Below are positions 12,969 to 57,969 of a DNA stretch of 64,000 nt, piece by piece. Both the position numbers and the translations under genes were made by a program. Positions within the stretch are counted from its first letter, which is position 1; the number at the start of each line of letters is the position of its first letter. Below the pieces are notes generated by a model. That model saw only the letters and a list, made by a program, of their open reading frames with translations. It searched no databases and was not told the DNA's origin. Origin of the DNA: Macrostomum lignano. Lineage: Eukaryota. The stretch lies in contig NIVC01002362.1 in NCBI GenBank assembly GCA_002269645.1, forward strand, positions 1-64,000, in the 5' to 3' direction.

Positions 12969-13828
12969 TTTAGAAATGAAAGTCAAGCTCACTCGCTTTA
13001 CGTATTTATGCGTTTTCTTTACAGAATTCGAATGGGAGCTCGGTCTTCGCCTATTGGCTAGCAGAATTATAGCAGCACCGCCGCTTTTGTGTCTTGGCTG
13101 AAGAGAAGGATTCGAATGCAAAATTCGGCAATTGCAGTCTCTGTGGGCATCACTGTACTAATGGTAACAAGTACCAGTGCACTGCAAAACCTAAGCCGTT
13201 GGTTTCTGAATGATTTCCGTGGAATAGATTCCTGCAACAAACTAGCATATTAGCTAGATGAATTCTTTCGATGACATTTCGAGCGAAAGTTTGTAGAGCC
13301 TTTCTAGAATCGTTGTTGATATGAAGCCGATCGGGTCGGCTTCTTTGATTAGTTAACCTGGATAACGGCATTTACTTGATCATCTTTCAAGCTTGGCGCC
13401 TCAGCAAGATAATCTTTGGTAGGTCACAATCTCTTAAACCCTGCCTTTGTAGATCCGAGTTTGTAAAGAAGCAAATATTTTTCCGTTTCAAAAACAATAC
13501 GCAAAATATTTATTCGACAAAATTAAGCTGGCTACGCTTGTAATGCTGGCATAAAACAGCTGGCCGTGGTTGTATTCGCCACCAACTCTGCCAGAAATTC
13601 GATCTCAGGGGATGGCAGTGGTTACACGCAAGAAAATTTCTTGAATAACCTTGATGACGCGCAAAAAATGATTTTAGTTTTAGCTACACCAATAGCATCA
13701 ACGCATCCGTGTCCTAGCTTTCTACTGATGTAAGTAGAGATAGTCGACTTTTTCGACTTACTGTATTTTTTCAAGTTCTATAAGTCAGTTGATGAAATGT
13801 TTTTTGCATTGTTTATTTAATATCGCCA

Positions 13829-27859: not shown

Positions 27860-28926
27860 TACTAGTGTTTATTGTTTAGTCAGTCAGACAGTCAGCCAGC
27901 CAGCCAGCCAGCCGGTTGGTTTGATTAACAGCAGCAGTATTAGAAGAAGCAGAAGAGACAAACATAAACTATCTAACATAGATAGATAGATAGATTACCA
28001 TAGACTAAAGTACTAACTAGTGTCGGTTAGCATCCATTTGTCTATCCATCCCTCCATTCAAACAAAGTGATGGATGTAGGGGTAAGAGATATCGATTCTA
28101 TTATTAGCAACTGTTACTATAATTGGCTACAAGATTTTAGCTCTCCATTCGTTATTATGTGTGTGTCTGTCTATTTATAGATGGTTGTTACCATATGTAG
28201 CCGACTAATATATATATTTATAGATGGTTGCTACTATATATAGCCGACTAATATATATTTATAGATGATTTTTACTATATATAGCCGCGTTAGTCTATTT
28301 ATATCGCTTTATTACTATAAATAGCGTTTATGTTACTAATTATGGATGTTGTTACTAAAAATATAATTGCATACTCGTCCCTAAGAGATATAGAGACGAA
28401 TTGATGATATATACGATAGGTTAGACACATAGACAACTAGTAGTAAATATTAGCGAGTGTAGCTATAGTCAGTCAGCGGTCTATATCTCTTAGGGACGAG
28501 TATGCAATTATATTTTTAGTAACAACATCCATAATTAGTAACATAGACTACTAATTATAGTAATTAAGCGATATAAATAGACTAACGCGGCTATATATAG
28601 TAAAAACCATCTATAAATATATAATAGTCGGCTATATATAGTAGCAACCATCTATAAATATATATATTAGTCGGCTATATATAGTAATAACCATCTATAA
28701 ATATGATGATGACCATGCTGATGCCGATGACCGTTTGTACTGTCTATTTATAGTAACATAAACAATATTTATAGTAACAATATCCTAACTCTAACCCTAA
28801 CCCTAGTTTAATATAAATAGTAACATAAACGCTATTTATAGTAACAATACCCTAACCATAACAATACCCTAACAATACACTAACCCTAACCCTAACCCTA
28901 ACTAACCCTAGTTTAATTCTTGGGGA

Positions 28927-30154
28927 CATTTCTCGAGAGAGCGCAGCGGTACCCCAGAAAAAAAACTCGGCTGTGACAGGTAAGTGGTTGGGTTGGGGTT
29001 GTGAATAATGATAGTGATAGGTAGGTAGATTGGGTGGGTTAGTTAGTTAGTTAGTCAGTTAGTCAATCGGTATGCTATATGAGTACTACTAGTGTTTATT
29101 GTTTAGTCAGTCAGACAGTCAGCCAGCCAGCCAGCCAGCCGGTTGGTTTGATTAACAGCAGCAGTATTAGAAGAAGCAGAAGAGACAAACATAAACTATC
29201 TAACATAGATAGATAGATAGATTACCATAGACTAAAGTACTAACTAGTGTCGGTTAGCATCCATTTGTCTATCCATCCCTCCATTCAAACAAAGTGATGG
29301 ATGTAGGGGTAAGAGATATCGATTCTATTATTAGCAACTGTTACTATAATTGGCTACAAGATTTTAGCTCTCCATTCGTTATTATGTGTGTGTCTGTCTA
29401 TTTATAGATGGTTGTTACCATATGTAGCCGACTAATATATATATTTATAGATGGTTGCTACTATATATAGCCGACTAATATATATTTATAGATGATTTTT
29501 ACTATATATAGCCGCGTTAGTCTATTTATATCGCTTTATTACTATAAATAGCGTTTATGTTACTAATTATGGATGTTGTTACTAAAAATATAATTGCATA
29601 CTCGTCCCTAAGAGATATAGAGACGAATTGATGATATATACGATAGGTTAGACACATAGACAACTAGTAGTAAATATTAGCGAGTGTAGCTATAGTCAGT
29701 CAGCGGTCTATATCTCTTAGGGACGAGTATGCAATTATATTTTTAGTAACAACATCCATAATTAGTAACATAGACTACTAATTATAGTAATTAAGCGATA
29801 TAAATAGACTAACGCGGCTATATATAGTAAAAACCATCTATAAATATATAATAGTCGGCTATATATAGTAGCAACCATCTATAAATATATATATTAGTCG
29901 GCTATATATAGTAATAACCATCTATAAATATGATGATGACCATGCTGATGCCGATGACCGTTTGTACTGTCTATTTATAGTAACATAAACAATATTTATA
30001 GTAACAATATCCTAACTCTAACCCTAACCCTAGTTTAATATAAATAGTAACATAAACGCTATTTATAGTAACAATACCCTAACCATAACAATACCCTAAC
30101 AATACACTAACCCTAACCCTAACCCTAACTAACCCTAGTTTAATTCTTGGGGAC
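28927..30154 (+). repeat. Copy 2 (uninterrupted) of the 1227-bp unit: G-rich start, internal 223-bp-arm inverted repeat (29399-29621 / 29707-29930), CCCTAA-like repeats at the end
   Basis: Read directly. The same hairpin lies at 28172-28394 / 28480-28703 in copy 1. Confidence 0.93.
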
Positions 30155-30810
30155 GCTCTCGAGAAATGTGAAATTTCTCTAAGTGTCAAAATTATTTTGA
30201 CTTAGAAAATTTTCGCGCCGAAAAAATTTTTTTTATTTCATTTCGTCTATCTAATAAAACGTATGCTGCTGTTTGCCCAAACTGTCTCACGGCCAATCTG
30301 TCTTCGGAAAGTGCATATAGATTTCTTGGAAAATCTGTCTGGGGAACATCATGTTGGTTTCTATTGTCTGCCAGTCAGTCAGTCAGTCTGTCTGTCTGTC
30401 TGTCTGTCTATCTGTCTGTCTGTCTGTCTGTCTGTCTCAGGATTGTCCCATCGCACTGCCATTATGTCCAATAAAAGTGCATTCAGTTTTCTTGGAAAAT
30501 ATTTCTGGGGAAAGCGCAAACTGTAACTAACTCCCCAGACACTAACTCTAACCCTAACACTGGGGTGTTCAGCAGTGTTCTGGGGAATGCTTGCTGTCTG
30601 GGGAATGCTTGCTATCTGGGGTGGATGCTTGCTATCGGGGGGATGCTTGCTGTCTTTCTTTACTCCCCAACGAAATGGAAAGCCTGACATTTCTATCTTG
30701 GAAAATCTGCCTGAGGAAACCGCAAACTGTCCCTTCTCCGCTAATCCGTCTTTGGGAATATCAAGTTGATTTCTTTCTATGATAATCTGTCCGGGGAAAC
30801 CGCAAACTAG
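30154..30810 (-). repeat. Right inverted-repeat arm: 65-bp terminal block, four copies of a TCTTGGAAAATCTGTCTGGGGAAACCGCAAACT-like motif, (GTCT)n, and the inverted 17/18-bp array (30580-30654)
   Basis: Motif copies at about 30324, 30490, 30696 and 30785. Reverse-complement counterparts at 25057-25111. Confidence 0.8.
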
Positions 30811-31358: not shown

Positions 31359-31800
31359 ATGCAACGGCAGCCTACTGACAACAACGTTACCGGTTGCGGA
31401 GATGGTGCTACGCGATCTATACCGAATCGACTAGTCACCATCGTAAACAACCTGTGGTCAACGGTAATGTCGTTTGTATCAGATACATCGACCAACAGCA
31501 ATGTACAACAAGATGCTGCTATCGAGTTGTGCAATACGGCTGCCGGTTTTGATGTAGATGCCGCTGCAGTCAGTGCTGTTGCTGCTGCGCCTGCTGCTGC
31601 TGCTGCTGCTGCCGATGCTGTTGCTGCTGCGCCTGCTGCTGCTGCTGCGCCTGCTGCTGCTGCTGCTGCTGCCGATGCTGCTGCTGCGCCTGCTGCTGCT
31701 GTTGTTGCTGCTGCTGTTGTTGCTGCCGATGCTGCTGCTGCTGCTGCTGCTGTTGCTGCCGATGCTGCTGCTGCGCCTGCTGCTGCTGTTGTTGCTGCCG

Positions 31801-31838
<38 letters not shown>

Positions 31839-34800
31839 GATGCTGCCGCTGCTGCTGATGCTGCTGCTGCCGATGCTGAACCGTCTACAGTGCCAAAGTC
31901 GCATACTCCTACGCCTGATTTGTCCGCTCATACACCGGTTGTGTGGCGTGACAGCACCATCGACGAGGACGATTATGCGAATGGAATTGTTGCCACCTTT
32001 TCTCCGGCTGCATCATTCTCGACTGGCGATCTCATTGGCGAGTTTTGTCGAGCATCGACTCCAAAACAATCGTCAGCCGCGGCGAATGACTTACTCAACG
32101 CGTCTATCTCGTCAGTCAACAGTCAGCTGTTATTCTGCAATGACGATGAGTTTATGCGCGATGTAGAACCGACAGCCAATAATGGCAACAAAAGTGAGTA
32201 GAAAACAACTATATTTTATCAATATATCTAAGCTTAACTAATTCGAATGATTGATAGACGCAAGTCTGTTATACATGAGCGTTTGAACTGACTGACTGAT
32301 TGATTGATTGATTGATTGTTTGTTTGCTTGGTTTGTTGAATGAAAGGATTAAATTGTATAAATTAGTGTCTTTTTTTTAACAAATAATTATCACAGGGCC
32401 GAGTGTTCAAGATGGCGCGTCGTTTGCTTCACCGACTAGCAAACCAAGTTGTAAAAGGCGACGTCAACAGCTAATGCGCTCCGACTGCGAACTTGTATCG
32501 GATGCATCTTCGTCATCACAGTTGTCGAGCGCAAAGCCGTCGCCCTATCAACGACACACTGGACAATCGCCAGACGATGCGCGGCGATCTGATGCGTCCA
32601 GTACAATAGGCGCGCCCAATCATCGGACGACCATAGCATCAGCCCGTAGATCGAGTCGGACGAGATTGACCAGCAACAGCGACTCTGGCAGTTCTGTTAG
32701 CTCGCATACGATCGATCGTATCCGGTCACACGTATTGTCACGCCATGCGTCTGTCTCGATTGCGGCGGCAACAGCGGCAAATTCGATGACAACGAAAGAC
32801 AGGGCGTTTGCTGCGATACGAGCGAAGTGTTATGCGAGGGCCAAATGTGTACAGTCGCCATCAACAGTATGTGCGTCACGGGCTGTACCATATGCGATAC
32901 ATGGTTTGGATGCGGCTGCGACGACTATCGATGCGGCGAATGATGTGGCGGCGTCGGCGGCGTCGTCGACGGCTAATTTGGCAGCGAACATGGCACAGGC
33001 TGCTGCGTCGTCGACGGCTAATTTGGCAGCGAACATGGCACCGACTGATGCGGCGGCGGCGGCGGCGGCGGCGTCTGCGACGGCGTCGGTTGTGGATGAC
33101 TTATCGTCAATCAGTAGTCAATCGCTGACTGATGCAGCCAATCTAGCCGCAAACGCCGCCGCGTATGCCAATAGAAACGCGCGTCCGACTGTCCCACGGG
33201 ATGTACAATCCGGATATGCACTGGCCTCCGGACCAATACATTTCCATAGAAATCAAGACGTCGAACCACTCAACGCGTTTTCAAGAGACGATCGTCACGT
33301 GCTCAGCATAAAGCGGATACACCACATTGTGGAATTGTCCGGTGTGCTTGATGCCGACCAACTGAAAGTACGTCTCTATATAGCACTGCGCGGTCGAAGT
33401 AATGCGCTTGTTGTCGCCAATCTAACCGGAAATTCGCCCAACATGCTGGATGACGATGAGATGATTCATAAGGCGCTTAATCGTCACAGGCAATCGAAGC
33501 ATGGGGCCGTGGACAGTCTGGATTATAACTGGTGTGGAGTTACGCTGTACATACAAACACCCAGCAGCATTACCGGCTACCAGTTATATAACATCATTCA
33601 CCAGATACTGTCTACTGATCCGAATATCCGGTATTTAGTAAGCGACAACGATTGCCGAATCATCATCGCTGGCGTCCGACAGGTCAAGAATGCGTTGGTC
33701 TCAGTTACACGGCACGACGGCGGCGCCATGCTACGTAATGTAAATATGTCCGATTGTAGCATGCTCGTGTCGGCGTATCATTGGATTGAAAATCATAGCG
33801 AGCTAGTAGTCACACCAGATCCGGAGGACGATTTTCTGATGCATCACGTGACGTGCAAGCACGAGCTAACTCGTCTTTTTCAGCGCGTACAGAAAATTCG
33901 TCGATTCAATCTAGAGCGTCTCATTGGTTGTGCGTGCTGTGCTCATTTTATAAATCTGCATACGCGCGATCGTACCATCAACGACGTCTCTATTGGCAAC
34001 AACAACCAATCGACGACTGGTGTAGACAACAATCAGTCCAATGAAAGCGAGACTAACGCCACTAATCCGACTAATGCTGCTGATGCTGCTGCCGACGCCG
34101 CCTTTGTCGCCGATAACGCCGCCGCCGCCGCCGCAGCCGTTGCCGCCGACTCAACTGCCGCTGTACGAGTCGACAGACCGCTGGACGAACGACGACGCGG
34201 ATGTCCAACGATGCGAGCCGTGTGCGCAGCTCTCCGCCAATGTAAAGGTGTGGTGTACCTATGGGGGCCGCCTGGTGTTGGCAAAACTCATAGCGTAGCT
34301 GCGCACTGCGGTGAAACTCGTGTTGTCAATATAGTCCCGTCACGAACTACAGCCAACACGTTTTTATTCGATCCGTTGGACATCGCTGTACATCGCGTCA
34401 TGTTCATCGACGAGGTTCGACCAGAGCTGTTCGATTCAAAGTCTGACGCTATGGTGAGTAAATTAGTACATAATTGTTGATTGTTGATAATAAATTATGC
34501 AAATTTATGTAATTTATCAATATTGTTGATATTGATTTATGTTAATGTTTATTGTCCATCGTGCAGGTTCCGCTCCTACGGTTGATCAATGGAGACACCT
34601 TCAATGTCAACCAGAAGTATCAATCGATAGTGAGTCACCATTGGCGAGACAGACTACTCGTCCTGGCTGGTCACGACCCTGTGAATGCGTACAGCCCCGA
34701 TGTAAAAAGACGTCTTCGGCATGGGCTCACATTGCAAGGTCGACTCGTCTCGGTGCTGCACGTTGGGCATCCGCTATATGGGACGTACGACTGTGACGGG

Positions 34801-34848
34801 ACGTGCGAGCCTGTACGAGATCTAACAGGTGATCCCATACGCGATTGA
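31359..34848 (+). CDS. Three-exon gene (31359-32193, 32397-34453, 34567-34848; 1057 aa) for a parvovirus NS1/Rep-like superfamily-3 helicase protein with a long Ala/Ser-rich N-terminus
   Basis: Both introns are GTGAGT...CAG and restore the frame (phase 1 and phase 0); total 3174 nt. Walker A GPPGVGKT (34265-34288), FLFD..., Walker B MFIDE, B' LLRLINGDTFNVNQKY, motif C-like LLVLAGH, Arg-finger-like KRRL. Confidence 0.8.
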
Positions 34849-35483: not shown

Positions 35484-35917
35484 GACTGACTGTTAAAACT
35501 GGAAAATTGATTGAGATAAACCAACTGACATCTGTATATTAATTAGTAAGTAGGGAAAAAATCACAATGTTTTATATGTTGCTTCTGCCATTTTTTAATC
35601 GTTTGTACATATGTATATATATATATATTATTTATTTATTTATGTGATTATATTTTTGCTCGTGGTTTGTACATATTATTGTATCCATAGTTGATTGGTT
35701 GACTTTGTTTCAAAGTGGTCAATTTGTTGTTTTGTTAAATACTTGTATGTGTACAGTGCATGCCGTTACCGTTATGCATACGTTATAAAATTTGTTTGTA
35801 TAATATTTAAGTGGTTTATTGACCAATATTCCGTTGCTGGTTGTTGGTGCCAAAACTTTGTCCAAGACATCCACACACACACACAAATTCATATGGGTCA
35901 ATGTTTTAGTCATGGCC

Positions 35918-37547
35918 GGTCACATCACCATTCAATTTGGTCACATCACCAATCAGCCTGGGTCTCATCACCAGTCAGCCTCGGTCACATCACCATTCAA
36001 CTCGGTCACATCACCAGTCAGTCGGGTCACATCACCAGTCAGTCTGGTCACATCACCAGTCAGTCGGTCTGTTCATATCACCAGTCAACTCAGTCACATC
36101 ACCAGTCAGTTGGGTCATATCACCAGTCAACTCGGTCACATCACCAGTCAACTCGGTCACATCACCAGTCAGTCTGGTCACATCACCAGTCAGTCGGTCT
36201 GTTCATATCACCAGTCAACTCGGTCACATCACCAGTCAACGCTGTCACATCACCAGTCAACTCGGTCACACCACCAGTCAGTTGGGTCACATCATCAGTC
36301 AGTCTGGTCGCATCACCAGTCAGTCGGTCTGGTCATATCACCAGTCAACTCGGTCACATCACCAATCAACTCGGTCACATCACCAGTCAACTCGATCACA
36401 TCACCAGTCAGTTGGGTCATATCACCATTCAACTCGGTCACATCACCAGTCAGTCGGGTCACATCACCAGTCAGTCTGGTCACATCACCAGTCAGTCGGT
36501 CTGTTCATATCACCAGTCAACTCAGTCACATCACCAGTCAGTTGGGTCATATCACCATTCAACTCGGTCACATCACCAGTCAGTCGGGTCACATCACCAG
36601 TCAACTCGGTCACATCACCAGTCAGTCGGTCTGGTCATATCACCAGTCAACTCGGTCACATCACCAGTCAACTCGGTCACATCACCAGTCAACTCGGTCA
36701 CACCACCAGTCAGTTGGGTCACATCATCAGTCAGTCAGGTCACATCACCAGTCAGTCGGGTCACATCACCAGTCAACTCAGTCACATCACCAGTCAGTCG
36801 GTCTGGTCATATCACCAATCAACTCGGTCACATCACCAGTCAATTCGGTCACATCACCAGTCAGTCGGATCACATCACCAGTCAACTCGGTCACATCACC
36901 AGTCAACTCGGTCACATCACCATTCAACTCGGTCACATCACCAGTCAGTCGGGTCACATCACCATTCAACTCGGTCACATCACCAGTCAACTCGGTCACA
37001 TCACCAGTCAACTCGGTCACATCACCAGTCAACTCGGTCACATCACCAGTCAGTCGGGTCACATCACCAGTCAACTCGGTCACATCACCAGTCAACTCGG
37101 TCACATCACCAGTCAACTCTGTCACATCACCAGTCAACTCGGTCACATCACCATTCAACTGGGTCACATCACCATTCAACTTGGTCACATCACCATTCAA
37201 CTTGGTCACATCACCAGTCAACTCGGTCACATCACCAGTCAACTCGGTCACATCACCAGTCAACTCGGTCACATCACCAGTCAGTCGGGTCACATCACCC
37301 GTCAACTCGGTCACATCACCAGTCAACTCGGTCACATCACCAGTCAACTCGGTCACATCACCAGTCAACTCGGTCACATCACCAGTCAACTCGGTCACAT
37401 CACCAGTCAGTCGGGTCACATCACCCGTCAACTCGGTCACATCACCAGTCAACTCGGTCACATCACCAGTCAACTCGGTCACATCACCAGTCAATTCGGT
37501 CACATCACCAGTCAACTCGGTCACATCACCAGTCAGTCGGGTCATAT
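35918..37547 (+). repeat. 21-bp minisatellite GGTCACATCACCAGTCAACTC / ...AGTCAGTCG, about 75 copies
   Basis: Read directly. It explains ORFs 35695, 35819, 35937 and 36787. Confidence 0.96.
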
Positions 37548-39675: not shown

Positions 39676-41271
39676 CTATAATCTATTGATATATGGCTCA
39701 ACTGCGCCAATAGTTCGGCGTATATGTCCAATTTCTATGCGTCGCATCGGTCGCTCGGCGCGAATCAGGCTAACAATATGAGCAGTCCCGTGTGTGACAA
39801 CCCATTGACAGACTAGTGCTCGACTAATCGTATATTTCTGCGTATTGATAGACCCGACTGCGTCGGCAATAGCAAACTTGCCAGAAATATCGTTGACTTG
39901 CTTGTTGAGCAATAATTTTGCTGGCGCATATTCTATATATTCAAATGTGTGTAGACCTTCAAATCGGCTCTCCTCCGGCTGGTTGTCCGCTGTCGTTTTG
40001 ATCTGCTGCGCACTGCGTCGTTTCCATGTATCATACAGACCCGTCCATTGTATATTCGTCCGTATATCTTCAAATCTTCAAACAATTCGCGACCGCCAGT
40101 CCATATATGCCAGCCGGTGATCGTAGTGACAGGGCGCTGGCACGCGAATCGCGCCTACCGAACTGCGCCGTGTTCTGCGCGACTGCTCCGAATGTCAGGT
40201 GACCCGACGGTGCTGCGGTTTGGCTCCGGTCCAGCGCGTCGTCGTGTGTACTGTTGACGACGACACATCGCGACTGACCGGCTGTCCAACCCGCGGACGG
40301 TTTCGACACCTGACAATTTGCGACCGCCAGTCCGTGTATGCCAGTCTGTGGTCGTAGTGGCAGGGCGCTGGAACACGTATAGTGCCTGCTGTACTGCGCC
40401 GTGTTGTGTGCGACCGCTCCAAGTGTCAGGTGACCCGACGGTGCTGCGGTTTGGCTCCGGTCCAGCGCGTCGTCGTGTGTACTGTTGACGACGACACATC
40501 GCGACCGACCGGCTGTCCAACCCGCGGACGGTTTCGACACCTGACAATTTGCGACCGCCAGTCCGTGTATGCCAGTCTGTGGTCGTAGTGGCAGGGCGCT
40601 GGAACACGTATAGTGCCTGCTGTACTGCGCCGTGTTGTGTGCGACCGCTCCAATTGTCAGGTGACCCGACGGTGCTGCGGTTTGGCTCCGGTCCAGCGCG
40701 TCGTCGTGTGTACTGTTGACGACGACACATCGCGACCGACCGGCTGTCCAACCCGCGGACGGTTTCGACACCTGACAGTTGCGACCGCCAATCCGTATAT
40801 GCCAGTCCGTGGTCATAATGACATGGCGCTGGCACACGTATCGTGCCTGCTGATCTAGGTAGACCAGTCTGTGATCGTACCGACACGTCGCTGTTGTCGG
40901 CCGTCTACTCATTCAAACGCATAGGCCTTCAAATCGGCCCGTATACAATTGACTGTCCAAATTCCTGCATATCGCATTGATCGCTCGGTACGAAATCTGC
41001 CTAACAATATGAGCAATCCTGTGAGTGACAACCCCATTGACAGACTGCATCTCGTATATGGTTCTGCTATAAAAAAATATTCATCCGCTCTGGTATGCCT
41101 AGTAACCCCAAATATTCGTCGTATATTTCTATATATCGATAAACCCGGCTGTGTTGGCAATAGCAAACTTAATATTGATATTTGTGGATGAGTTTTTTGG
41201 TAGAATCGTTTTTTTATAGTTATTGTTTTATTCAAGTTTGATATAACAAACCCGTAAGCTTGTCGTTCCAT
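39676..41271 (-). pseudogene. Degenerate repeat-built coding region: two diverged copies of one block (39676-39960 and 40915-41170) flanking about 3.5 copies of a 231-bp (77-codon) tandem unit (about 40085-40850)
   Basis: ATG at 41271 with GTATATAA about 40 bp upstream. KFAIA...QWVVTH and RFEGL motifs occur in both block copies. Frameshifts and stops are present. Confidence 0.4.
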
Positions 41272-42746: not shown

Positions 42747-42775
42747 ATGTCCGAGTCCAACAAAGAGCAACAACA

Positions 42776-42808
<33 letters not shown>

Positions 42809-43628
42809 TCGGCAGCAGCAACAGCAGCAACATCTGCAAGAGTCGCGCACTGCTGACCATCATCTAGTCTGGGCAGACGACATCACAGACGCTGATTTGG
42901 TGGCTGCGTGTGTATCTGTTGAAGAACAACAGCATACAACGCAGCAAACACAGATGATGGCGTCTGTATCGTATGCCGGGACCAGACGCGCCGTGTCAGC
43001 GATGCATTCGGCAGGCATCGACTGGGCTGAACAGCTCGACGAAGCAATGCGCTGGTTAGACGGCGATTTGTATGCAGCAAACGCGATTGTGACCGACGTT
43101 GCTGCGACATCGATGCCGTCTAACTCGCGTAAGCGGCGTCATTCGTGCATCGGCCAAGCTATGGACGTCGATGCTGATGCCGATGTCGACACCCTGTTCG
43201 ACTCAGATACGCTGGCAGAGTGCGACGCACTAGAAACAGCTTATTATGCTTCTATGTGCAATGCCGCCAGTGACAACGTCGAACAGTCGCCGACTGATGC
43301 GACTACAGATCACGCAAATGCGGCCGCCGCTGATGATATGTACATATCAGACGCGGAACTTGTTGCCGTATGCGAAGAGGTCGAGGCGACTGTCCATCTG
43401 AGCGCCATCGATCAATGTGCACCACCGGACGAAGCGTTGGCTAGCCCAATTAGTCAAGTCGACCCGTCCGCGTCGCTGTACGACTCCGATGGCAATATGC
43501 TAGAGGAGTCCAGCTTTGCCGTTGATCGGCGGTCAGTCGCCTGCCAGGTAAACATGTGTCGACCTCGATGCAATCGCACCTGGACTCGACTGTACCGTAG
43601 ATGGCGTTCTCGTCGATCCACCAACTAG
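42747..43628 (+). CDS. Orphan acidic protein (293 aa, or first exon if the CAG|GTAAAC donor at 43548 is used) with N-terminal poly-Q and repeated D..D[AS][DE]L..[AV]C..[VL]E motifs
   Basis: Long ORF that is mostly non-repetitive, with ATG in an A/C-rich context. A 41-bp segment is homologous to 23687-23727. Confidence 0.55.
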
Positions 43629-44356: not shown

Positions 44357-45066
44357 ACCAGTCTGGTCACATCACCATTCAACTGGGTCACATCACCAGT
44401 CAGTCGGTCACATCACCAGTCATCTCGGTCACATCACCAGTCAGTCGGGTCACATCACCAGTCAACTCGGTCACATCACCAGTCAGTCGGGTCACATCAC
44501 CAGTCAACTCGGTCACATCACCAGTCAGTCGGGTCACATCACCGGTTAACTCGGTCACATCACAAGTCAACTTGGTCACATCACAAGTCAACTCGGTCAC
44601 ATCACCAGTCAGTCGGGTCACATCACCAGTCAACTCGGTCACATCACCAGTCAACTCGGTCACATCACCAGTCAACTCGGTCACATCACCAGTCAACTCG
44701 GTCACATCACCAGTTAACTTGGTCACATCACCAGTCAGTCGGGTCACATCACCAGTCAACTCGGTCACATCACCAGTCAGTCGGGTCACATCACCAGTCA
44801 ACTCGGTCACATCACCAGTCAGTCGGGTCACATCACCAGTCAACATGGTCACATCACCAGTCAGTCAGGTCACATCACCAATCAACTCGGTCACATCACC
44901 AGTCAGTCGGGTCACATCACCAGTCAGTCGGGTCACATCACCAGTCAACTCGGTCACATCACCAGTCAGTCGGGTCACATCACCAATCAACTCGGTCACA
45001 TCACTAGTCAATGCAGTCACATCACCAGTCACCACAGTCACATCACCAGTCACCAATCATCACCAG
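44357..45066 (+). repeat. Second array of the same 21-bp minisatellite, about 33 copies, same orientation
   Basis: Read directly. Confidence 0.96.
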
Positions 45067-47077
45067 TGGTATGGATTCTTTACAACTGTTATTATAAACA
45101 GGCATATATTTATATACTCACTTGTTCAATTGGTCAAGTTGTTGCCAATTATCCATGATTATTAGATGTTGGATTAGTTGTAACTCTTATAATAAATAGT
45201 CGATCTGTTGGCTGTGGCTGGAATTCAAATTTAACTAAAGGTTAATTAATAATACAATCACTTCTTTTGTGTCTGTCTGTCTGTCTGACACATTTAATTC
45301 ATTGAGGGTCAGAGAGATAGATAGTGAGAAGGTTGGCCAATACAACGTTGTGGTAGCCTAGCCCGTCTATATAGTATGGAATTGGATGGGAGAGCAACGT
45401 GTTTGTACACGGACGGACGGACGGACAGACAGACAGACAGACAGACAGCGAATAACCGACCGCACATCGTTGTCTTGTGCGTACAACGGACCGTTGTGCG
45501 TTCATCGTTTGATATCAAATTGGTTTGCTAGCTAATTAGACAGGCTAAAAGATCGCGTGCGTGGAAGTTTAGTGGTTTCGATCGATCAATGAAAGTACAG
45601 TGTTGGGTGGTGGGGCCAAGCGAAGCGAGCGAGAGGATTTGGGGGGGGGGGGGGGAGGTTGGGGCTTTTGGGGGCAGAGTGGCGAGCGATGGAAGAGGGG
45701 GTAAGCGACCGCGGAGTCGAGGTTTGGTGTGTGTTTTGAAAGTACAGGGAATTCATTGTGACTGGAAAAAAAGACGAAGTAATTTAATTAGACGTTGGAT
45801 TTGAAAGTTGAAATAGACATAGAATGAAGAATAAAATGTGAAAGCGCCAATTTTAAATATTTCAATAAACAGATGAATGAATCCAATACGCGTCAATGTA
45901 CCAACCAAGTATAAATCACTTGGCGCACTATACTCATTCCAGTTCATTCACAAGTTCAATCACAGTTTATCATAATCCAAGATTCCAGAAACAATCAAAC
46001 GAATCGGACAGACTGGGCGAATGCGCAAAATGATCAAAACTCACAAGCAAGAGAATATAACTAGTTATAACTAACTTTGCTTAACCATAGATTGAATGAA
46101 TGAATGAATGAATGCAGAATTGGCTTCGATTGATGCTCGCGAGCGCGCATTTTATCAGTTAGCAGGCTACCCCCCACGCTTTCTATTTCGATACTAAACG
46201 AGCTAAATATAAACGGGGGATGACCCTAGACAGTATACAATTGACCTTGTCATCGGCCAATACAGAGCAGCGAAAACCAACCCCCATAATAGAAGCCAAT
46301 AGAGGCGTAAAATTGATGCTAAAATTGGCGAATATGGTATATCCTAGGGTCTTTGCTTTTTAGGAACAAAAATAAAGTTCAACTTGGTTAAAACAAAACG
46401 ATAAACATTGAAAATTTAGCTGGGATGAATTGAAGCAAGCAGGTCGTTCTCTGATCGAGAAAAACTCAGCCCTAAGACGCCGCTTTCTCGAGGAAAAATA
46501 TTCCTCTCTCCCCTATCCTTGCAGTAAATAATTAAAAAGACAAGCTGCTGCGCGAACACTAAAGCACGATCCCAAAACTTCTTGGCAACACTGATGATGC
46601 TGCGTCGTTTGAAGGTTTTGGTTTTTAAAGCAAGCTAGCCAATGTAAATACCAAAATATATATTTTAAGCTACATGTACATAAAATGTAGGTTCACTATC
46701 GAGTGCGCTGTCTAAAACAATAACTTTCACGGACTTTTGACATATTTATCTTGGAAACGCATTGATGCACCTAAAAAAGAACCCCAAAAAGATGTTCTAT
46801 GCAAGAAGGTGGTTGCTGAGTGTACATGTTGTTAGAAAATATCAAATCCGCAGAACCAGTATCTTACAGAAGCACAAGCAAGAGGTGTTATAGTGGTAAA
46901 AGAAATTGCTGAAGTGGTATTTAACGGAAAAATTATTTGCATTTCACTCAAAAACGGCATCAACAGAACGTTGCTAAACGCTTCGTATGTGAGTACAACA
47001 TTCGAATATAATTGGAATGCTCACTAGATCTACGATTGTCATAGCAACAAAGCACAGAGTGATCAAAACCTGACTCT

Positions 47078-48103
47078 TCACGTCGGTACCGTTGACCAAT
47101 CGCGAGTTTCAGACGGCGCCACGGCGGCAGACCGTTTGCAGGCGCGGCAAGCGAAGGCAGCGCGAATCAGGCGCAGGTAGCTGCGTCGAAAGTTTGAGTT
47201 CAGCACGCCGTAGATGATCGGATTCAGAGTTGAATTGAAGACGGCGAGCCACGTGATCACCTTGTGCGGAATTCTTCCTATAGGAGCTAAGAACTTGTCG
47301 ATGTACACGTGGATGCTGTAGGGACCCCAGCACAAGTTAAAGATGATAAAAGCAGTCAGCACAGGAGCAAGCGCCTTCCATTCCTTGCTGACAGATGTGC
47401 CATCTGCCGTGTCTCCAGACAATGAGCCCTCAGCCGCTTTGCGAATCTGAAACAGCTTGTAGAACAGGCTGATGTAGCAACTGGCGGCCACCAATGATGG
47501 CACTGCTACGCCAACTAAAGTGAGCAGAAAGCTCAATGCAAAAGGAGCTTCGTCATCGTAATAAAAGCAGATGAATACTTCAGGAATGAAGCCAAAGCCA
47601 CCCTGCCACCAGAAAAAGCCGCTGATGAGAAACCAAAACACCCAGCAGGCTACGCAGTATGCAATCACCCTGCAGTCCGTGAAGTGCCTCTGGTACACGA
47701 CTCGGTGCATGACGCACAGGTTCCGAGCTACTGCGATCAGCGTGAAGCTGAAGTTGGACACTCCAGCGGCCGAGAACAGCGCGTACGCGTTCACGCGACA
47801 AATGACGTCGTGAAAGACATTGTTCTCAGCGATGCGGTTCGCCAGGATAGTCGGGATCGAGTATGAGCACACGAGCAGGTCGGCCATGCCGATGTTCACA
47901 ACCAGGATGTTCGTGGCCGACTTGAGCTGCTTGAATCGCGTCACGGAGAGGATCGTGAGCAGGTTTCCACAAACTCCAACGCACATTCCCGCGATAAGAA
48001 AGGCGATGTCAGTGACTTTGAGCTCCGGTGGATCGGCGTCCACTAGTTCAGTGCTATTGTCGTTTGAAGAATAAAAAAATGTACAGTTCTTGCCGTCATC
48101 CAT
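47078..48103 (-). CDS. Intronless class A GPCR, paralog 1 (341 aa), resembling orphan melatonin/Tre1-Moody-type receptors
   Basis: 7 TM segments. GN in TM1, MAD in TM2, IAVARN at the DRY position, CWGP in TM6, NSTLNPIIYG in TM7. The subfamily is a by-eye judgement. Confidence 0.92.
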   Translation of the reverse strand: MDDGKNCTFFYSSNDNSTELVDADPPELKVTDIAFLIAGMCVGVCGNLLTILSVTRFKQLKSATNILVVNIGMADLLVCSYSIPTILANRIAENNVFHDVICRVNAYALFSAAGVSNFSFTLIAVARNLCVMHRVVYQRHFTDCRVIAYCVACWVFWFLISGFFWWQGGFGFIPEVFICFYYDDEAPFALSFLLTLVGVAVPSLVAASCYISLFYKLFQIRKAAEGSLSGDTADGTSVSKEWKALAPVLTAFIIFNLCWGPYSIHVYIDKFLAPIGRIPHKVITWLAVFNSTLNPIIYGVLNSNFRRSYLRLIRAAFACRACKRSAAVAPSETRDWSTVPT

Positions 48104-49215
48104 CTACCAATTCTCTGAAGTCCTTGAGTTCCAACCGATTTTATAACAATTGTGCCTGAAAACGTTATTGTTTTTTTATTTTTTTATTCAGTTTAACAAG
48201 GAAATGGCTGACAGAAATACCTCTCCGGTATGCATGAGTGATTCTGTTTTATTGGAGACTTAGCATAAAGTACAATGTAAGTGGGTTTCTAAAACATATT
48301 TTGTGTCAAGAGCTTTCAGAGTGTCGATAATAATGAACAAGCTTTATTAGCTGCATGCTACACTATTGGTAAATCTGTAGTCGAAAGCCTTCAAGTCAAT
48401 ATTTGACACAGGTATAGAAACTATGTTTAATGGGAATATCTTACCTTCTCAGTGTTTATATTGCAGGTCTTGTTTGATAGTTTCAAAATTTTGTGTGCTA
48501 AATCGATTTTATTCCTGAAGCAAGCACTGAAGTCGTAAAACTCGAAATATTGACGAAAACAGACCGCTTGAGGCTGAAAGCGAGGAACGAACACTCGGTT
48601 TGTCTCCGCTATGGAAAAGCTTTTTATTCTCCTCAGAGCAGCCAATCATTGAGCAGCTTTGTGAGGGAGCGAATGCTGTCTAGATACTCGTATATACGCA
48701 TCGGGAGACTTTCGGATTTATAAGTCGATTTAGATATTTCTGGCAGGTTATTTTCTGCAGGGGCAAATGATGTGCAGTAGAGTCGCGACGTCTGAAAACT
48801 TTAAAACTGACGTCAAACAAATCCGCTACTACCTGAACACCCTGCAGACGCTTCCTCGTAGCAGGCAGCTTTGCTAGCTTAAAATGGCTGCGTTACAGCC
48901 AATTAATGTTTTGAAAAAAGATCACAGAACCCCAATTATGGCTATATCAAGAGACAGCTAAAGACAAAAACAGGTGCAGGCTCGTAACCTGTTCGGGTAG
49001 GTTGGCAGGGCATAGAAAGACTGCAACAAAGAAAATAATTCATTATATTTTAGCTCATAGTTAATGTTCAAAATTAGATACAAAAACCACTCAATTGCGT
49101 CCTATTCTACTTTCAACTTGCTTCACGCGCGCAAAAATGCTTTTTGCCACGTTAATAGCTATTTGTCTTCTTGTTCTTGCTTCCTTCCATGTGTGCAAAT
49201 AGCAACTGGACTGGA

Positions 49216-51775
<2,560 letters not shown>

Positions 51776-52929
51776 TCTATTTGAAATGATTTCATCAAAA
51801 GAGATTTTTAAACAAGGAGCCTCCCTTTCCCCTCCTAAGACGACTTGAAATCCCAATGGATTACCAAAGGATTTTCCTTTCGGATGGGAGTAATTTCAGT
51901 CCACAGCGAGATGAAACATCAATGCACTTAAAATGTCCGAAATTTCGTTGCGAATATTTTTTGAATTTTTGCGCTACATGCCGCTAGATCTTTCGTTGGT
52001 AGTGGGTTTTTCGATTTTTAATTTGATTAAACTTCTCAACTCAGTGCGTGAGTTGCTGTGTTGCTGTAATTTTGACGAGTTCCGTGTTGATCACGCTTTT
52101 CGATAATTACTTAACGGACTGAGATAGCAGCTGCAGCTTCAATAATCAGTCTCTTTTAATCTTTTAGAAATCATTTTAACAAAGATTACAATGCTTGTAA
52201 AATTCGATTGCTGCATGCTCAAGAGCAGGTCAGACAGCGTCTTTTTTTATAATCGATCGAGAGCGATTTTCCCTTTTTAAAGAAAAAATTAACAGAAATC
52301 ACGATTTAACGCTTGCCACGTCATTCTTTGCATTGAATGCCTGTAGCCATTATTTATTCAGTGTCTTAGTGTGCGTATATCGCACTACGAGCATATTGAG
52401 ACTTCTCAGTGACCGTCTGGGTCCCCGCGTCTTTCCAGCTAGAGAGGAGGGCAAATTAAAACAAAACACAAACGAAAAAACACGACACCCCGCCCAACGG
52501 CCAGGCGCGATTAGCTAAACAGCCGAGGCCACTAGCCCTCCAACCCACCACCCCGGGGGGGGGGCACCGAGCCCGCCGCCAGACCGAGCCAATCAGAACG
52601 CAGTAAACAAAAAATAGTACACAAAAGGCGTGACTGGCGCCAGGCAATTTACGGCACGGAAATAATGATAACAAAGGTAGGAGGGGTGAATTACTACCAG
52701 CTAAAGCTTAAGCCACACGACAAGTCACAGTCCGGTGCATACAGCTTCAGTCACACAACGACTGGAGGACAGGGTGCCCTTGCACTGAAACAAAAAAGCA
52801 AAACACGACATTTGTTAGTTAAGTCTGTGAACGATGTGAACCAGAAATAATGCTTAGTGACTTTTTTTAAAAAGCTCAATGCTCAATAATCAAAAGATAT
52901 CCGAGCAAAAGATATCTCAGCAAATTTAG

Positions 52930-57600: not shown

Positions 57601-57969
57601 CTTCCTGATCAAATGAAGCCCTTTATTTAAAAAATCAATTGACGAGGCTCATGGTTGCGCAGAGAGCTTCATTCTTATCTAGAAATTTACAAAAGCCAAT
57701 GCAGTTGGCGTAGGGGTCGATGCAAAACTGACGCGAAACAGACTCAATTATTTTGATTGCGTCTGGGATTTAAAAAAAATACTTGAATGCCGCAATGAGA
57801 AAGTGAGGCAAGCTTGAAACACATGATGCAGCGAGTAAGCAGGAGCGCAGAGCATAGGCAATTATCTCACCAGGCTTTGTGGGAAAAATCGGCAATAAAA
57901 TCAATTGACTTGAAAATAATTGATCAGATAGAAATCTCAGTAAGCTCGTTGTAACCCCAGTTTTCGGAC

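What the first reader, a model, noticed from the sequence alone, without database searches (positions are those of the whole stretch)
31359..34848. Intron-containing, parvovirus-NS1-like SF3 helicase gene hidden across three ORFs
Seen in sequence: three ORFs that the track lists separately join through two canonical GTGAGT..CAG introns (32194-32396, phase 1; 34454-34566, phase 0) into one uninterrupted 1057-codon frame. The second intron splits the helicase between Walker B (MFIDE) and B' (LLRLINGDTFNVNQKYQS). Established: SF3 helicases are characteristic of small DNA/RNA viruses and virus-derived elements, not of ordinary animal genes. The order GPPGxGKT, F.F.., hhhDE, G....v.qK matches parvoviral NS1 (e.g. 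NFPFND..VIWWEE..GGSKVRVDQK). Odd features: motif C reads VLAGH instead of ITSN; the only H-U-H candidate is IHFH; the place where the YxxxK nicking tyrosine is expected reads ALVSVTRHD; and about 400 aa of Ala/Ser-rich sequence precede the core. Inference: an intact, host-spliced replication gene of an endogenous ssDNA-virus-like element, or a domesticated NS1-like gene, possibly with a non-canonical or lost nickase.
Basis: partly seen in the sequence, partly recalled or inferred. Interest (0 to 1): 0.88.

Follow-up and report, generated by a model that had tools for sequence, protein, structure and literature searches.

The report
Nuclease-dead viral Rep gene in flatworm
An animal (flatworm-like) chromosome carries an intact, intron-containing gene that descends from the replication protein of a small circular single-stranded DNA virus; it has lost the DNA-nicking residues but kept the helicase ATPase motifs, so it looks like a virus gene taken over by the host, not a working virus or a parvovirus gene.

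Summary
Exons 31359-32193, 32397-34453 and 34567-34848 (+) join across two AT-rich GTGAGT..CAG introns into 1057 codons without a stop. Intron 2 is confirmed by colinear homology with intronless relatives. Intron 1 is only plausible.

The C-terminal 180 aa are an SF3-type helicase. Walker A, Walker B, B' and the arginine finger are intact, but the sensor-1 Asn is replaced by Gly. Residues about 575-800 are homologous to the HUH nuclease domain of Rep proteins, yet carry G-V-T where relatives have H-H-H and Ser where they have the catalytic Tyr.

The nearest relatives are two Macrostomum lignano proteins (62% and 43-47% identity) and a few metagenome fragments. Through two nuclease-competent relatives (P0008, L008; a sub-threshold Pfam Gemini_AL1 match) the family links to CRESS-type ssDNA-virus Reps that sit next to circovirus-like capsid genes. 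No specific link to parvovirus NS1 was found.

The gene has no capsid gene and no flanking terminal repeats. It lies among GPCR genes and carries a 574-aa Ala/Ser-rich extension and conserved Cys/His motifs.

Verdict: an endogenous, probably domesticated, nuclease-dead Rep-derived ATPase. It is a new variant of a known kind, of moderate interest. Expression and function were not tested.

The parts
31359..32193 (+). Exon 1 (aa 1-278 plus 1 nt). It holds the start ATG and part of the Ala/Ser-rich low-complexity N-terminal extension, and contains an in-frame (GCT)n microsatellite at 31574-31878.
   Evidence: there is an in-frame stop 21 nt upstream of the ATG
32194..32396 (+). Predicted intron 1, phase 1, GTGAGT..CAG, GC 28%, with a T-rich tract before the acceptor.
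   Evidence: it has no support from homology or RNA
32397..34453 (+). Exon 2 (aa 279-964). It holds the rest of the N-terminal extension, the Rep-N-like domain, a low-complexity linker, and the first half of the SF3 helicase.
34454..34566 (+). Intron 2, phase 0, GTGAGT..CAG, GC 23%, lying between Walker B and B'.
   Evidence: splicing restores colinearity with the intronless relatives L004 and P0002
34567..34848 (+). Exon 3 (aa 965-1057 plus the TGA stop). It holds B', motif C, the arginine finger and the Cys/His tail.
31359..33283 (+). N-terminal extension, aa 1-574 (intron 1 lies inside this span). It is 29% Ala and 13% Ser, has a basic KRRR patch at aa 298-301, and has no homologue in any relative.
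   Evidence: tblastn matches to relatives begin at about aa 571-577
33284..33961 (+). Rep-N-like domain (aa 575-800), homologous to the HUH nuclease domain plus the following helical region of the Rep proteins P0008 and L008.
   Evidence: hhalign probability 95-98.7%; the AF2 model is confident only for aa about 730-780
33536..33544 (+). G659-V660-T661, the position aligned to the H-H-H (HUH, metal-binding) motif of P0008 and L008.
   Evidence: alignment confidence is low here, but MAFFT and hhalign agree
33692..33718 (+). ALVSVTRHD (aa 711-719), the position aligned to motif III of P0008 and L008. The catalytic Tyr is replaced by Ser714 and the Lys by Arg717.
   Evidence: this segment is aligned with high confidence
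33962..34189 (+). Low-complexity Ala/Asn/Asp linker (aa 801-876).
34190..34740 (+). SF3-type helicase/ATPase core (aa 877-1022; intron 2 lies inside this span).
   Evidence: AF2 mean pLDDT about 77; Foldseek hits to E1, AAV Rep and PCV2 Rep; hhalign against CRESS Reps
34265..34288 (+). Walker A, GPPGVGKT (aa 902-909).
   Evidence: G..GKT is conserved in 10/10 aligned sequences
34400..34414 (+). Walker B, MFIDE (aa 947-951).
   Evidence: D in 9/10 and E in 9/10 sequences
34600..34623 (+). B' motif, FNVNQKYQ (aa 976-983).
   Evidence: N in 10/10 and K in 10/10 sequences
34657..34674 (+). Motif C position, LVLAGH (aa 995-1000). Gly999 stands where the relatives P0008, P0009 and P0004 have the sensor-1 Asn.
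   Evidence: Asn in 3/10, Gly in 4/10 and Ser in 3/10 sequences
34711..34713 (+). Arg1013, the putative arginine finger.
   Evidence: R in 9/9 sequences
34759..34806 (+). C-terminal His/Cys motif (H1032, C1040, C1044), conserved in the nuclease-dead clade and absent from P0008 and P0009.
   Evidence: H in 8/10 and C in 7/7 and 7/7 sequences; further conserved Cys at 790, 793, 881 and 888

Best explanation
This is a chromosomal, three-exon gene of a Macrostomum-like flatworm. It descends from the replication initiator (Rep: HUH nuclease plus SF3 helicase) of a CRESS-type circular ssDNA virus or plasmid.

Shown:
- The spliced frame is intact.
- The gene is homologous to Rep across both domains.
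- Walker A, Walker B, B' and the arginine finger are kept.
- The HUH histidines and the catalytic tyrosine are replaced, in this gene and in every member of its clade that covers those positions.
- The sensor-1 Asn is replaced by Gly.
- The flanks are host-like, with no capsid gene and no terminal repeats.

Inferred:
- Without a nicking tyrosine the protein cannot start rolling-circle replication, so it is not an autonomous replicon.
- It has been kept as a host protein. It would be nuclear (KRRR patch), would oligomerise as SF3 ATPases do, and would bind DNA through the degenerate origin-binding domain. Its long disordered N-terminal arm and new Cys/His (possibly zinc-binding) elements would serve host-specific interactions.
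- The most likely role is interference with infecting relatives, by occupying their origins or poisoning their Rep oligomers. A co-opted host DNA transaction is the alternative.
- Whether it still hydrolyses NTP is open, because of the Gly at sensor-1.
For: Gene model.

Relatives: 9 hits among 1.84 billion representative proteins. The two best are Macrostomum lignano proteins.

Homology to nuclease-competent Reps: hhalign of the clade against P0008 gives probability 98.7%, E 1.9e-16. Against L008 it gives 98.1%, E 1.1e-13, over 322 columns covering the whole protein. N-domains alone give 95%, E 3.6e-8.

What those relatives are: P0008 passes Pfam DUF5906 (SF3) and also hits PPV_E1_C and RNA_helicase. 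The L008 N-domain hits Gemini_AL1 at E 2.6e-4.

Comparison with viral sequences: hhalign of the clade against the Rep of a circular 1.9-kb CRESS-type contig (L014) gives 96.1%, and against L009 and L011 (Gemini_AL1 Rep beside a Circo_capsid gene) 87-89%. Against a P4/D5-type primase-helicase it gives only 10-28%.

Fold: the top matches are E1, AAV Rep40/68, the PCV2 Rep ATPase, genomovirus Rep and NS1.

Motif counts.

Constraint: pN 0.39-0.40 against pS 0.72-0.74 for the helicase compared with two relatives at 48% identity. New Cys/His columns are conserved in 7/7 sequences.

Intron presence differs among relatives (3 of 5 loci have one in this interval, at two different positions), which implies long residence in host genomes.

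Neighbours are rhodopsin-type GPCR genes. There is a single copy in the window and no flanking inverted repeats.
Against: - No expression data could be consulted.
- Intron 1 and the whole 574-aa N-terminal extension have no support from homology, and part of that extension is a microsatellite that is open in several frames.
- The sensor-1 Asn is lost, which may mean the ATPase is dead.
- Third-position GC (0.52) is lower than in the neighbouring GPCR genes (0.67-0.74).
- Synonymous sites are saturated, so pN<pS is only qualitative.
- Two relatives are damaged: the M. lignano copy in L001 has one frameshift, and the L005 copy is truncated with one premature stop and no helicase part. Some family members are therefore decaying.
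- The HUH identity of the N-domain rests on a sub-threshold Pfam hit (21.4 bits against a cut-off of 24) plus motif pattern. The AF2 model of that domain is poor, and a PDB sequence search found nothing for it.
- The host species is inferred only from the best hits.
Confidence: 0.72

Rival explanations
1. It is an endogenous or domesticated parvovirus (densovirus-like) NS1 gene.
For: Parvovirus NS1 proteins appear among the BFVD fold matches at E about 1e-6, and AAV2 Rep40/68 appear among the PDB matches. Parvovirus-related NS1 sequences are known to be common in flatworm genomes (PMC5013282). The protein is long, like NS1.
Against: The window protein gives no Pfam Parvo_NS1 hit. For P0008, Parvo_NS1 is the weakest of the SF3 hits (E 0.018, below the cut-off). 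The only N-domain profile hit in the family is Gemini_AL1. The closest viral contigs carry circovirus-type capsids, and one of them is circular. The fold matches are just as good for genomovirus/CRESS Rep and better for E1. The protein's length comes from a low-complexity extension, not from NS1 domains. There are no inverted terminal repeats and no VP gene nearby.
Confidence: 0.08
2. It is a neutrally decaying viral fossil whose frame happens to be still open. It is not expressed as a protein, and the 'introns' are just AT-rich insertions.
For: No expression evidence is available. The catalytic nuclease residues and the sensor-1 Asn are lost. Microsatellites lie inside the 'coding' sequence. 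Two relatives are broken: L001 has one frameshift and L005 is truncated. GC3 is unlike that of the neighbouring genes.
Against: The 1057 codons are open. The frame opens and closes exactly at consensus splice signals. Walker A, Walker B, B' and the arginine finger are conserved in 9-10 of 10 sequences, and new Cys/His columns in 7/7, among relatives only 25-62% identical. pN is about half of pS. The loss of the nuclease residues is shared by the whole clade, so it is old, and the rest of that domain stayed conserved afterwards.
Confidence: 0.15
3. It is the helicase gene of an uncharacterised mobile or episomal DNA element of flatworms (PEVE-like or a Rep-encoding transposon), and the upstream palindromic repeats are its ends or origin.
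For: The family has several copies in M. lignano. One copy elsewhere lies next to a transposase-like HTH_23 ORF. A tandemly duplicated 530-bp palindrome lies 1.2 kb upstream, at 28172-30165.
Against: The nicking residues needed for Rep-mediated mobility are absent. No matching repeat lies downstream, and no inverted repeats bracket the gene. There is only one copy in 64 kb. The copies are 43-62% identical, not near-identical. The M. lignano copy lies between ordinary genes (COG7, EME1/MUS81).
Confidence: 0.04
4. It is an ordinary cellular AAA+ ATPase with no viral ancestry.
For: The window protein on its own hits only generic P-loop/AAA profiles and FtsH-type chains. Lon, RuvB and Vps4 also appear among the fold hits.
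Against: Those hits cover only the Walker A region. The full-length homology is to HUH+SF3 Rep proteins. The B' motif and the compact helicase core of about 140 aa, without an AAA+ lid, are typical of SF3. The family has 9 detectable relatives among 1.84 billion representative proteins, which is unlike a conserved cellular gene.
Confidence: 0.01

Closest known systems
Rep proteins of CRESS-DNA viruses (Cressdnaviricota), of the Gemini_AL1-type HUH nuclease + SF3 helicase architecture; represented here by contigs L009/L011 (Rep beside a Circo_capsid gene) and the circular contig L014
   Same: The domain order is the same: N-terminal Rep domain, helical linker, SF3 helicase. Walker A, Walker B, B' and the arginine finger are shared. 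hhalign of the helicase gives 87-96% probability. The intermediate relatives P0008 and L008 have canonical H-H-H and Y-x-x-K motifs, and L008 gives a Gemini_AL1 hit.
   Different: The window protein has no metal-binding histidines, no catalytic tyrosine and no sensor-1 Asn. It is three times longer, because of a 574-aa disordered extension and a low-complexity linker. It has added conserved Cys/His motifs. It is interrupted by spliceosomal introns, is chromosomal, and has no capsid gene or stem-loop origin nearby.
Endogenous and domesticated Rep/NS1-derived genes of eukaryotes (circular-ssDNA-virus Rep-like genes in eukaryotic genomes, PMC3198968; parvovirus-related NS1 sequences in flatworms and other animals, PMC5013282)
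   Same: It is a lone replication-protein gene of an ssDNA virus fixed in a host chromosome, with an intact long ORF that suggests constraint. Flatworms are already known to carry many such sequences.
   Different: Those described for flatworms are parvovirus-NS1-like (at least 30% identity to NS1 in PMC5013282). This family matches no Parvo_NS1 profile, is CRESS-type, has introns and host-type additions, and forms a clade in which the loss of the nuclease residues is ancestral. No paper in the held library mentions it.
Papillomavirus E1 and AAV2 Rep40/68 SF3 helicase domains (PDB 1tue, 2v9p, 7apd, 9s0n, 7jsg) and the PCV2 Rep ATPase domain (8xms)
   Same: These are the best structural matches to the modelled helicase core (E 3e-6 to 3e-4, probability 1.00, 15-21% identity; TM 0.57 relative to the 140-residue PCV2 domain).
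   Different: There is no detectable sequence-level family membership. The N-terminal domains are unrelated or untestable. The sensor-1 residue differs.
PEVE/PIVE, planarian virus-like elements
   Same: Flatworm host, and an SF3-type helicase gene.
   Different: This could not be tested. No named PEVE/PIVE protein came back in any search, and I wrote out no sequence for it. PEVE is reported as extrachromosomal, whereas this gene is chromosomal, spliced and nuclease-dead.

Membership tests
SF3 helicase (AAA+ clade of small DNA/RNA virus replicative helicases) | Walker A (GxxGxGK[ST]) and Walker B (hhhDE) | tested here: met
   GPPGVGKT at aa 902-909 and MFIDE at aa 947-951. G..GKT is conserved in 10/10 sequences and D/E in 9/10.
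SF3 helicase (AAA+ clade of small DNA/RNA virus replicative helicases) | B' motif between Walker B and motif C | tested here: met
   FNVNQKYQ at aa 976-983. N and K are invariant in 10/10 sequences.
SF3 helicase (AAA+ clade of small DNA/RNA virus replicative helicases) | Motif C with the sensor-1 Asn | tested here: not met
   The window protein has Gly999 (LVLAGH). Asn is present in only 3/10 family members (P0008, P0009, P0004). His1000 is conserved in 5/10 and might substitute, but this was not tested.
SF3 helicase (AAA+ clade of small DNA/RNA virus replicative helicases) | Arginine finger downstream of motif C | tested here: met
   Arg1013 is conserved in 9/9 sequences.
SF3 helicase (AAA+ clade of small DNA/RNA virus replicative helicases) | SF3 fold | tested here: met
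   In the AF2 model built with a 12-sequence alignment, the helicase core has a mean pLDDT of about 77. The top Foldseek PDB hits are E1 (3e-6), AAV2 Rep and PCV2 Rep, and the BFVD hits are Rep/NS1/E1. Generic AAA+ proteins (Lon, RuvB) score similarly, so this supports the assignment but is not exclusive.
SF3 helicase (AAA+ clade of small DNA/RNA virus replicative helicases) | Match to a curated SF3 profile above threshold | tested here: inconclusive
   The window protein alone gives RNA_helicase E 0.31 and nothing else that is SF3-specific. Its relative P0008 passes DUF5906 (38 bits against a cut-off of 27.6), and the clade-to-P0008 hhalign probability is 98.7%.
CRESS-DNA virus Rep (HUH endonuclease + SF3 helicase) | Homology over both domains to HUH+SF3 Reps | tested here: met
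   hhalign against L008 gives 98.1% over 322 columns, and N-domains alone give 95%. The L008 N-domain matches Gemini_AL1 at E 2.6e-4, just below the cut-off.
CRESS-DNA virus Rep (HUH endonuclease + SF3 helicase) | Motif II (HUH metal-binding histidines) | tested here: not met
   G659-V660-T661 align to H-H-H of P0008 and L008. No clade member has histidines there.
CRESS-DNA virus Rep (HUH endonuclease + SF3 helicase) | Motif III (catalytic Tyr, YxxK) | tested here: not met
   Ser714 and Arg717 align to the Tyr and Lys. None of the 4 nuclease-dead clade members in this column (window, L004, P0005, P0006) has Tyr; the only Tyr there is P0008's.
CRESS-DNA virus Rep (HUH endonuclease + SF3 helicase) | Small circular genome with a capsid gene and a stem-loop origin | tested here: not met
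   The gene lies in a 64-kb chromosomal window among GPCR genes. There is no capsid-like ORF, and the gene contains introns.
Parvovirus NS1 | Match to the Parvo_NS1 profile (PF01057) | tested here: not met
   No hit at E<=10 for the window protein. P0008 scores E 0.018, 14.4 bits against a cut-off of 20.
Parvovirus NS1 | Linear genome context: terminal hairpins or inverted repeats and a VP gene | tested here: not met
   No inverted repeats bracket the gene. No capsid-like ORF is present. The upstream palindromes have no downstream partner.
Domesticated (exapted) endogenous viral gene | Intact ORF in a host chromosomal context with host gene structure | tested here: met
Domesticated (exapted) endogenous viral gene | Purifying selection and orthologues in related species at a syntenic locus | tested here: inconclusive
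   pN is below pS, but synonymous sites are saturated. Motifs are conserved. No synteny was found with the M. lignano locus L001. The source genome is not in the look-up collections.
Domesticated (exapted) endogenous viral gene | Expression as spliced mRNA or protein | not testable with these tools
   No transcriptome data are available here.

The most novel reading that the evidence does not exclude
This gene belongs to a previously undescribed family of host-kept, nuclease-dead Rep proteins, shared by Macrostomum and at least two other unidentified eukaryotic sources. In this family the viral origin-binding and helicase scaffold has been refitted with new Cys/His (zinc-type) elements and long disordered arms. 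It would serve a host function, such as heritable interference with ssDNA viruses or a DNA transaction of the host itself. That would be an animal example of a CRESS-virus Rep domesticated as a non-catalytic DNA-binding ATPase.
Probability: 0.35. Interest if true: 0.65.

Novelty: new variant of a known kind. Interest (0 to 1): 0.47.

Why it matters
Rep and NS1 genes of ssDNA viruses are among the viral genes most often captured by eukaryotic genomes, but few captured copies show signs of being refitted rather than merely fossilised. This gene has lost the nicking chemistry across a whole clade, yet keeps the NTP-binding, DNA-hairpin and arginine-finger residues. It has also gained introns, a long disordered arm and conserved Cys/His motifs. 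That pattern is what one expects if a host keeps the binding and oligomerising parts of a viral initiator for its own use. It extends CRESS-type Rep captures to free-living flatworms, where only parvovirus-like sequences had been described in the papers I could search. It also gives a concrete gene whose expression and distribution can be examined. Finally, it shows that motif-level resemblance to NS1 is not enough to assign a viral family.

Tried and rejected
- Pfam, PHROGs, NCBIfam and PDB sequence searches with the window protein alone gave only P-loop hits.
- The word-index protein search failed twice, swamped by low-complexity words. After trimming it returned only 3 proteins.
- AF2 without an alignment gave a useless model (pLDDT 39). 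With 12 sequences the N-domain was still poor, so the HUH fold could not be tested structurally.
- A PDB profile search with the N-domain alignment found nothing. A PDB profile search with the whole-family alignment returned only Walker-A matches to dynein and p97.
- Pattern scans with the close-clade alignment (metagenome collection) and with P0008 or P0008+L008 (viral collection) found no relatives; one alignment was too divergent to scan at all.
- Exact look-ups of the window's own ORFs and of P0001 found no record. The joined protein was not accepted for look-up. The source species and the locus of the closest paralogue therefore remain unknown.
- There is no synteny between the window and the M. 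lignano locus L001. The GPCR part of the P0001 gene model does not match the window's GPCRs beyond family level.
- dN/dS could not be estimated properly because pS is saturated.
- IHFH was rejected as the HUH motif because it lies outside the aligned domain.
- Rfam found nothing in the window.
- The upstream palindromes were considered as possible element termini and set aside, because there is no downstream partner.


Full report
**1. The observation**

The region was read directly, and the three proposed exons were joined as they stand.
- Exons 31359-32193, 32397-34453 and 34567-34848 give 3174 nt: 1057 codons and a terminal TGA, with no internal stop.
- Both introns start with GTGAGT and end with CAG after a pyrimidine-rich stretch. 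Their phases are 1 and 0.
- Intron GC is 28% and 23%, against 53-55% for the exons.
- The frames open and close next to the predicted splice sites. The exon-1 frame stops inside the donor. The exon-2 frame opens 18 nt before the acceptor and stops 24 nt after the second donor.

Intron 2 is independently supported. Relatives that have no intron there (P0002 in locus L001, and the single ORF of L004) are colinear with the spliced window protein, residue for residue, across the junction.

Intron 1 lies in sequence with no homologue. 49 of 232 GT..AG pairs would also keep the frame open, so it is plausible but unproven.

Two details need correction:
- The low-complexity N-terminal part is 574 aa (29% Ala, 13% Ser), not about 400.
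- IHFH (aa 559-562) lies upstream of the conserved domain.

**2. What the protein is**

Alone, the protein hits only generic P-loop profiles. The best SF3-specific hit is Pfam RNA_helicase at E 0.31.

A search of 1.84 billion representative proteins found nine relatives.
- The two best are from the flatworm Macrostomum lignano. P0001 (UniRef A0A1I8FT91) is 62% identical in the helicase. P0002 (PAA62424.1) is 43-47% identical.
- The others are short metagenome or read-archive contigs.

tblastn shows that homology covers aa about 571-795 and 877-1050. The first 570 residues are unique to the window gene.

**3. The link to Rep**

P0008 (351 aa) has the layout of a rolling-circle Rep.
- It has an N-terminal domain with an H-H-H motif and a Y-x-x-K motif, followed by an SF3 helicase.
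- The helicase passes the Pfam DUF5906 cut-off and also hits PPV_E1_C, RNA_helicase and, most weakly, Parvo_NS1.
- Other libraries place it beside P4-type primase C-terminal domains, which are also SF3.

A metagenome scan found L008, a 371-aa protein 39% identical to P0008 with the same motifs. Its N-domain matches Pfam Gemini_AL1, the geminivirus Rep catalytic domain, at E 2.6e-4. That is 21.4 bits against a cut-off of 24.

Profile-profile comparison ties the window clade to these two proteins:
- 98.7% probability, E 1.9e-16, against P0008.
- 98.1%, E 1.1e-13, over 322 columns spanning all of L008.
- 95%, E 3.6e-8, for the N-domains alone.

The same scans returned real CRESS-type virus contigs.
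- L009 and L011 carry a Gemini_AL1 Rep (7.6e-14) beside a Circo_capsid gene (4e-12).
- L014 is a 1.94-kb contig with a 144-bp terminal overlap, so it is circular. It carries a Rep and a capsid-like ORF.

The window-clade profile matches their helicases at 87-96% probability. It matches a phage-type primase-helicase at only 10-28%.

An AF2 model built with a 12-sequence alignment is confident for the helicase core (mean pLDDT about 77) but not for the N-domain.
- The best PDB fold matches are papillomavirus E1, then AAV2 Rep40/68 and the PCV2 Rep ATPase domain.
- The best viral-model matches mix genomovirus and CRESS Rep, parvovirus NS1 and E1.

So SF3 is well supported. The sequence evidence points to a CRESS-type Rep ancestor, and nothing singles out parvovirus NS1.

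**4. What has been lost and what has been kept**

In the alignments:
- The window protein reads G659-V660-T661 where P0008 and L008 read H-H-H.
- It reads Ser714 and Arg717 where they read the catalytic Tyr and Lys.
- None of the clade members that cover these columns has the Tyr or the histidines. The loss is therefore ancestral to the clade.
- The surrounding domain nevertheless stayed recognisably conserved.

In the helicase:
- Walker A G..GKT is conserved in 10/10 sequences.
- Walker B Asp and Glu are each conserved in 9/10.
- The B' Asn and Lys are conserved in 10/10.
- The putative arginine finger is conserved in 9/9.
- The sensor-1 Asn survives in only 3/10. The Macrostomum-like subclade has Gly followed by a conserved His.

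The clade has also gained conserved cysteines and a histidine that P0008 and P0009 lack: C790, C793, C881, C888, H1032, C1040 and C1044, conserved in 4/4 to 7/7 sequences.

Non-synonymous differences are about half the synonymous ones (pN 0.39-0.40 against pS 0.72-0.74 in the helicase). Synonymous sites are saturated, so this is only qualitative.

**5. Context**

- The gene occurs once in the window.
- No inverted repeats bracket it.
- No neighbouring ORF resembles a capsid or any other viral protein. The neighbours are rhodopsin-type GPCR genes.
- The M. lignano copy P0002 lies on a 220-kb contig downstream of COG7 and EME1/MUS81-type genes. There is no synteny with the window.
- Intron content varies among the five loci with DNA over the Walker B to B' interval. 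The window and two contigs from one read set (L006, L007) each have a phase-0 intron there, but at positions about ten codons apart. L001 and L004 have none. The introns were therefore gained within host genomes.
- Two relatives are damaged. The L001 copy has one frameshift. The L005 copy is truncated, with one premature stop and no helicase part, and is followed by a transposase-like HTH_23 ORF.

**6. How it most likely works**

Shown: a spliced, open, host-embedded gene that is homologous to Rep over both domains, with the nuclease residues gone and the NTPase residues kept except sensor-1.

Inferred:
- Without the tyrosine it cannot nick an origin, so it cannot drive rolling-circle replication or its own mobility.
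- It is kept as a host protein. It probably enters the nucleus (KRRR at aa 298-301), oligomerises like other SF3 ATPases, and binds DNA through the degenerate origin-binding domain.
- The disordered arm and the new Cys/His elements would provide host-specific contacts.
- I consider interference with infecting relatives the most likely use, and a host DNA transaction the alternative.
- Whether it hydrolyses NTP is open.

I put 0.72 on the identity (an endogenous, nuclease-dead, CRESS-type Rep derivative) and about 0.35-0.45 on true domestication.

**7. Rival explanations**

- A parvovirus NS1 origin is weakly supported by fold hits only, and is contradicted by the profile evidence.
- A neutral fossil is not excluded without expression data. 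It fits poorly with the splice-exact frame and the clade-wide motif conservation.
- A mobile element fits poorly with the dead nuclease, the single divergent copies and the lack of termini.
- A purely cellular AAA+ ATPase is contradicted by the full-length Rep homology and the rarity of the family.

**8. Comparison with what is known**

Captured Rep and NS1 genes are well known in eukaryotes (PMC3198968). Parvovirus-like NS1 sequences are abundant in flatworms (PMC5013282). Searches of the held library found no description of this family or of CRESS-type Rep genes in Macrostomum. PEVE/PIVE could not be compared because no named hit came back.

The finding is a new variant of a known kind. It is an endogenous Rep derivative, unusual in having introns, a clade-wide dead nuclease, an altered sensor-1 and added conserved Cys/His motifs.

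**9. Verdict**

- Observation: confirmed.
- Interpretation: partly supported. SF3, virus-derived, host-spliced and nickase lost are all supported. The ancestor is CRESS-type rather than parvoviral, and there is no sign of mobility.
- Interest: moderate, 0.47.

Noticed in passing
window 28172-30165: A unit of about 1227 bp is repeated in tandem (two copies plus a partial third). Each copy contains a near-perfect palindrome of about 530 bp (arms of 153 nt at 95% and 69 nt at 99% complementarity) built from 41-43-bp internal repeats. The region is AT-rich (GC 32%) and looks foldback- or MITE-like. It lies 1.2 kb upstream of the Rep-like gene, but nothing links the two.
   Followed up: partly
window 35917-37535 and 44359-45067: The same 21-bp minisatellite occurs at two sites, about 76 copies at the first. 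It is open in all three forward frames, so it produces long spurious ORFs.
   Followed up: partly
window 11517-13121(-), 47081-48103(-), 52930-53916(-), 60197-61201(-): A cluster of intronless rhodopsin-family GPCR ORFs (Pfam 7tm_1, E 5e-19 to 3e-35). The three at 47-61 kb are close paralogues. The M. lignano gene model P0001 also fuses a Rep-like part to a 7tm_1 part, but the receptors are not specifically similar.
   Followed up: partly
window 49171-51789, also 56001-58000: A very long short-unit microsatellite (translating as SIYL repeats), with extreme GC and AT skew at 50-52 kb. A second region of strong skew lies at 56-58 kb.
   Followed up: no
window 31574-31878 and 32960-33063: There are in-frame repeats inside the gene. 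A (GCT)n microsatellite of about 100 units in exon 1 encodes Ala-rich runs. A 45-bp unit repeated 2.3 times in exon 2 duplicates a 15-aa segment. The N-terminal extension is therefore likely to be length-polymorphic.
   Followed up: no
window 40070-40912(-): An ATG-initiated 280-aa ORF made of about three tandem repeats of roughly 80 aa. It was not searched against any protein library.
   Followed up: no
window 42747-43628(+): An ATG-initiated 293-aa ORF that is Gln-rich and acidic, with no Pfam match. It is an unexplained neighbour 8 kb downstream of the gene.
   Followed up: partly
L005 (JGI 3300040801 contig, 1995 bp): This relative is cut short after the Rep-N-like domain. It is followed by an ORF with a transposase-type HTH_23 domain (E 2e-4), which suggests disruption by a transposon.
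   Followed up: partly
L014 (IMGVR_UViG_3300023284_002197, 2083 bp): The contig has a 144-bp terminal overlap, so it represents a circular molecule of about 1.94 kb. It carries a Rep helicase ORF and an opposite-strand capsid-like ORF. It is the closest clearly viral relative in hand (hhalign probability 96%).
   Followed up: partly
L012/L013 (Ga0115013_10042300, Ga0209503_10019247): These are very AT-rich contigs with Rep-like ORFs of about 400 aa that have an H-x-D-type motif II and a lysine-rich N-terminus. L013 holds two copies. Their origin is unknown.
   Followed up: no
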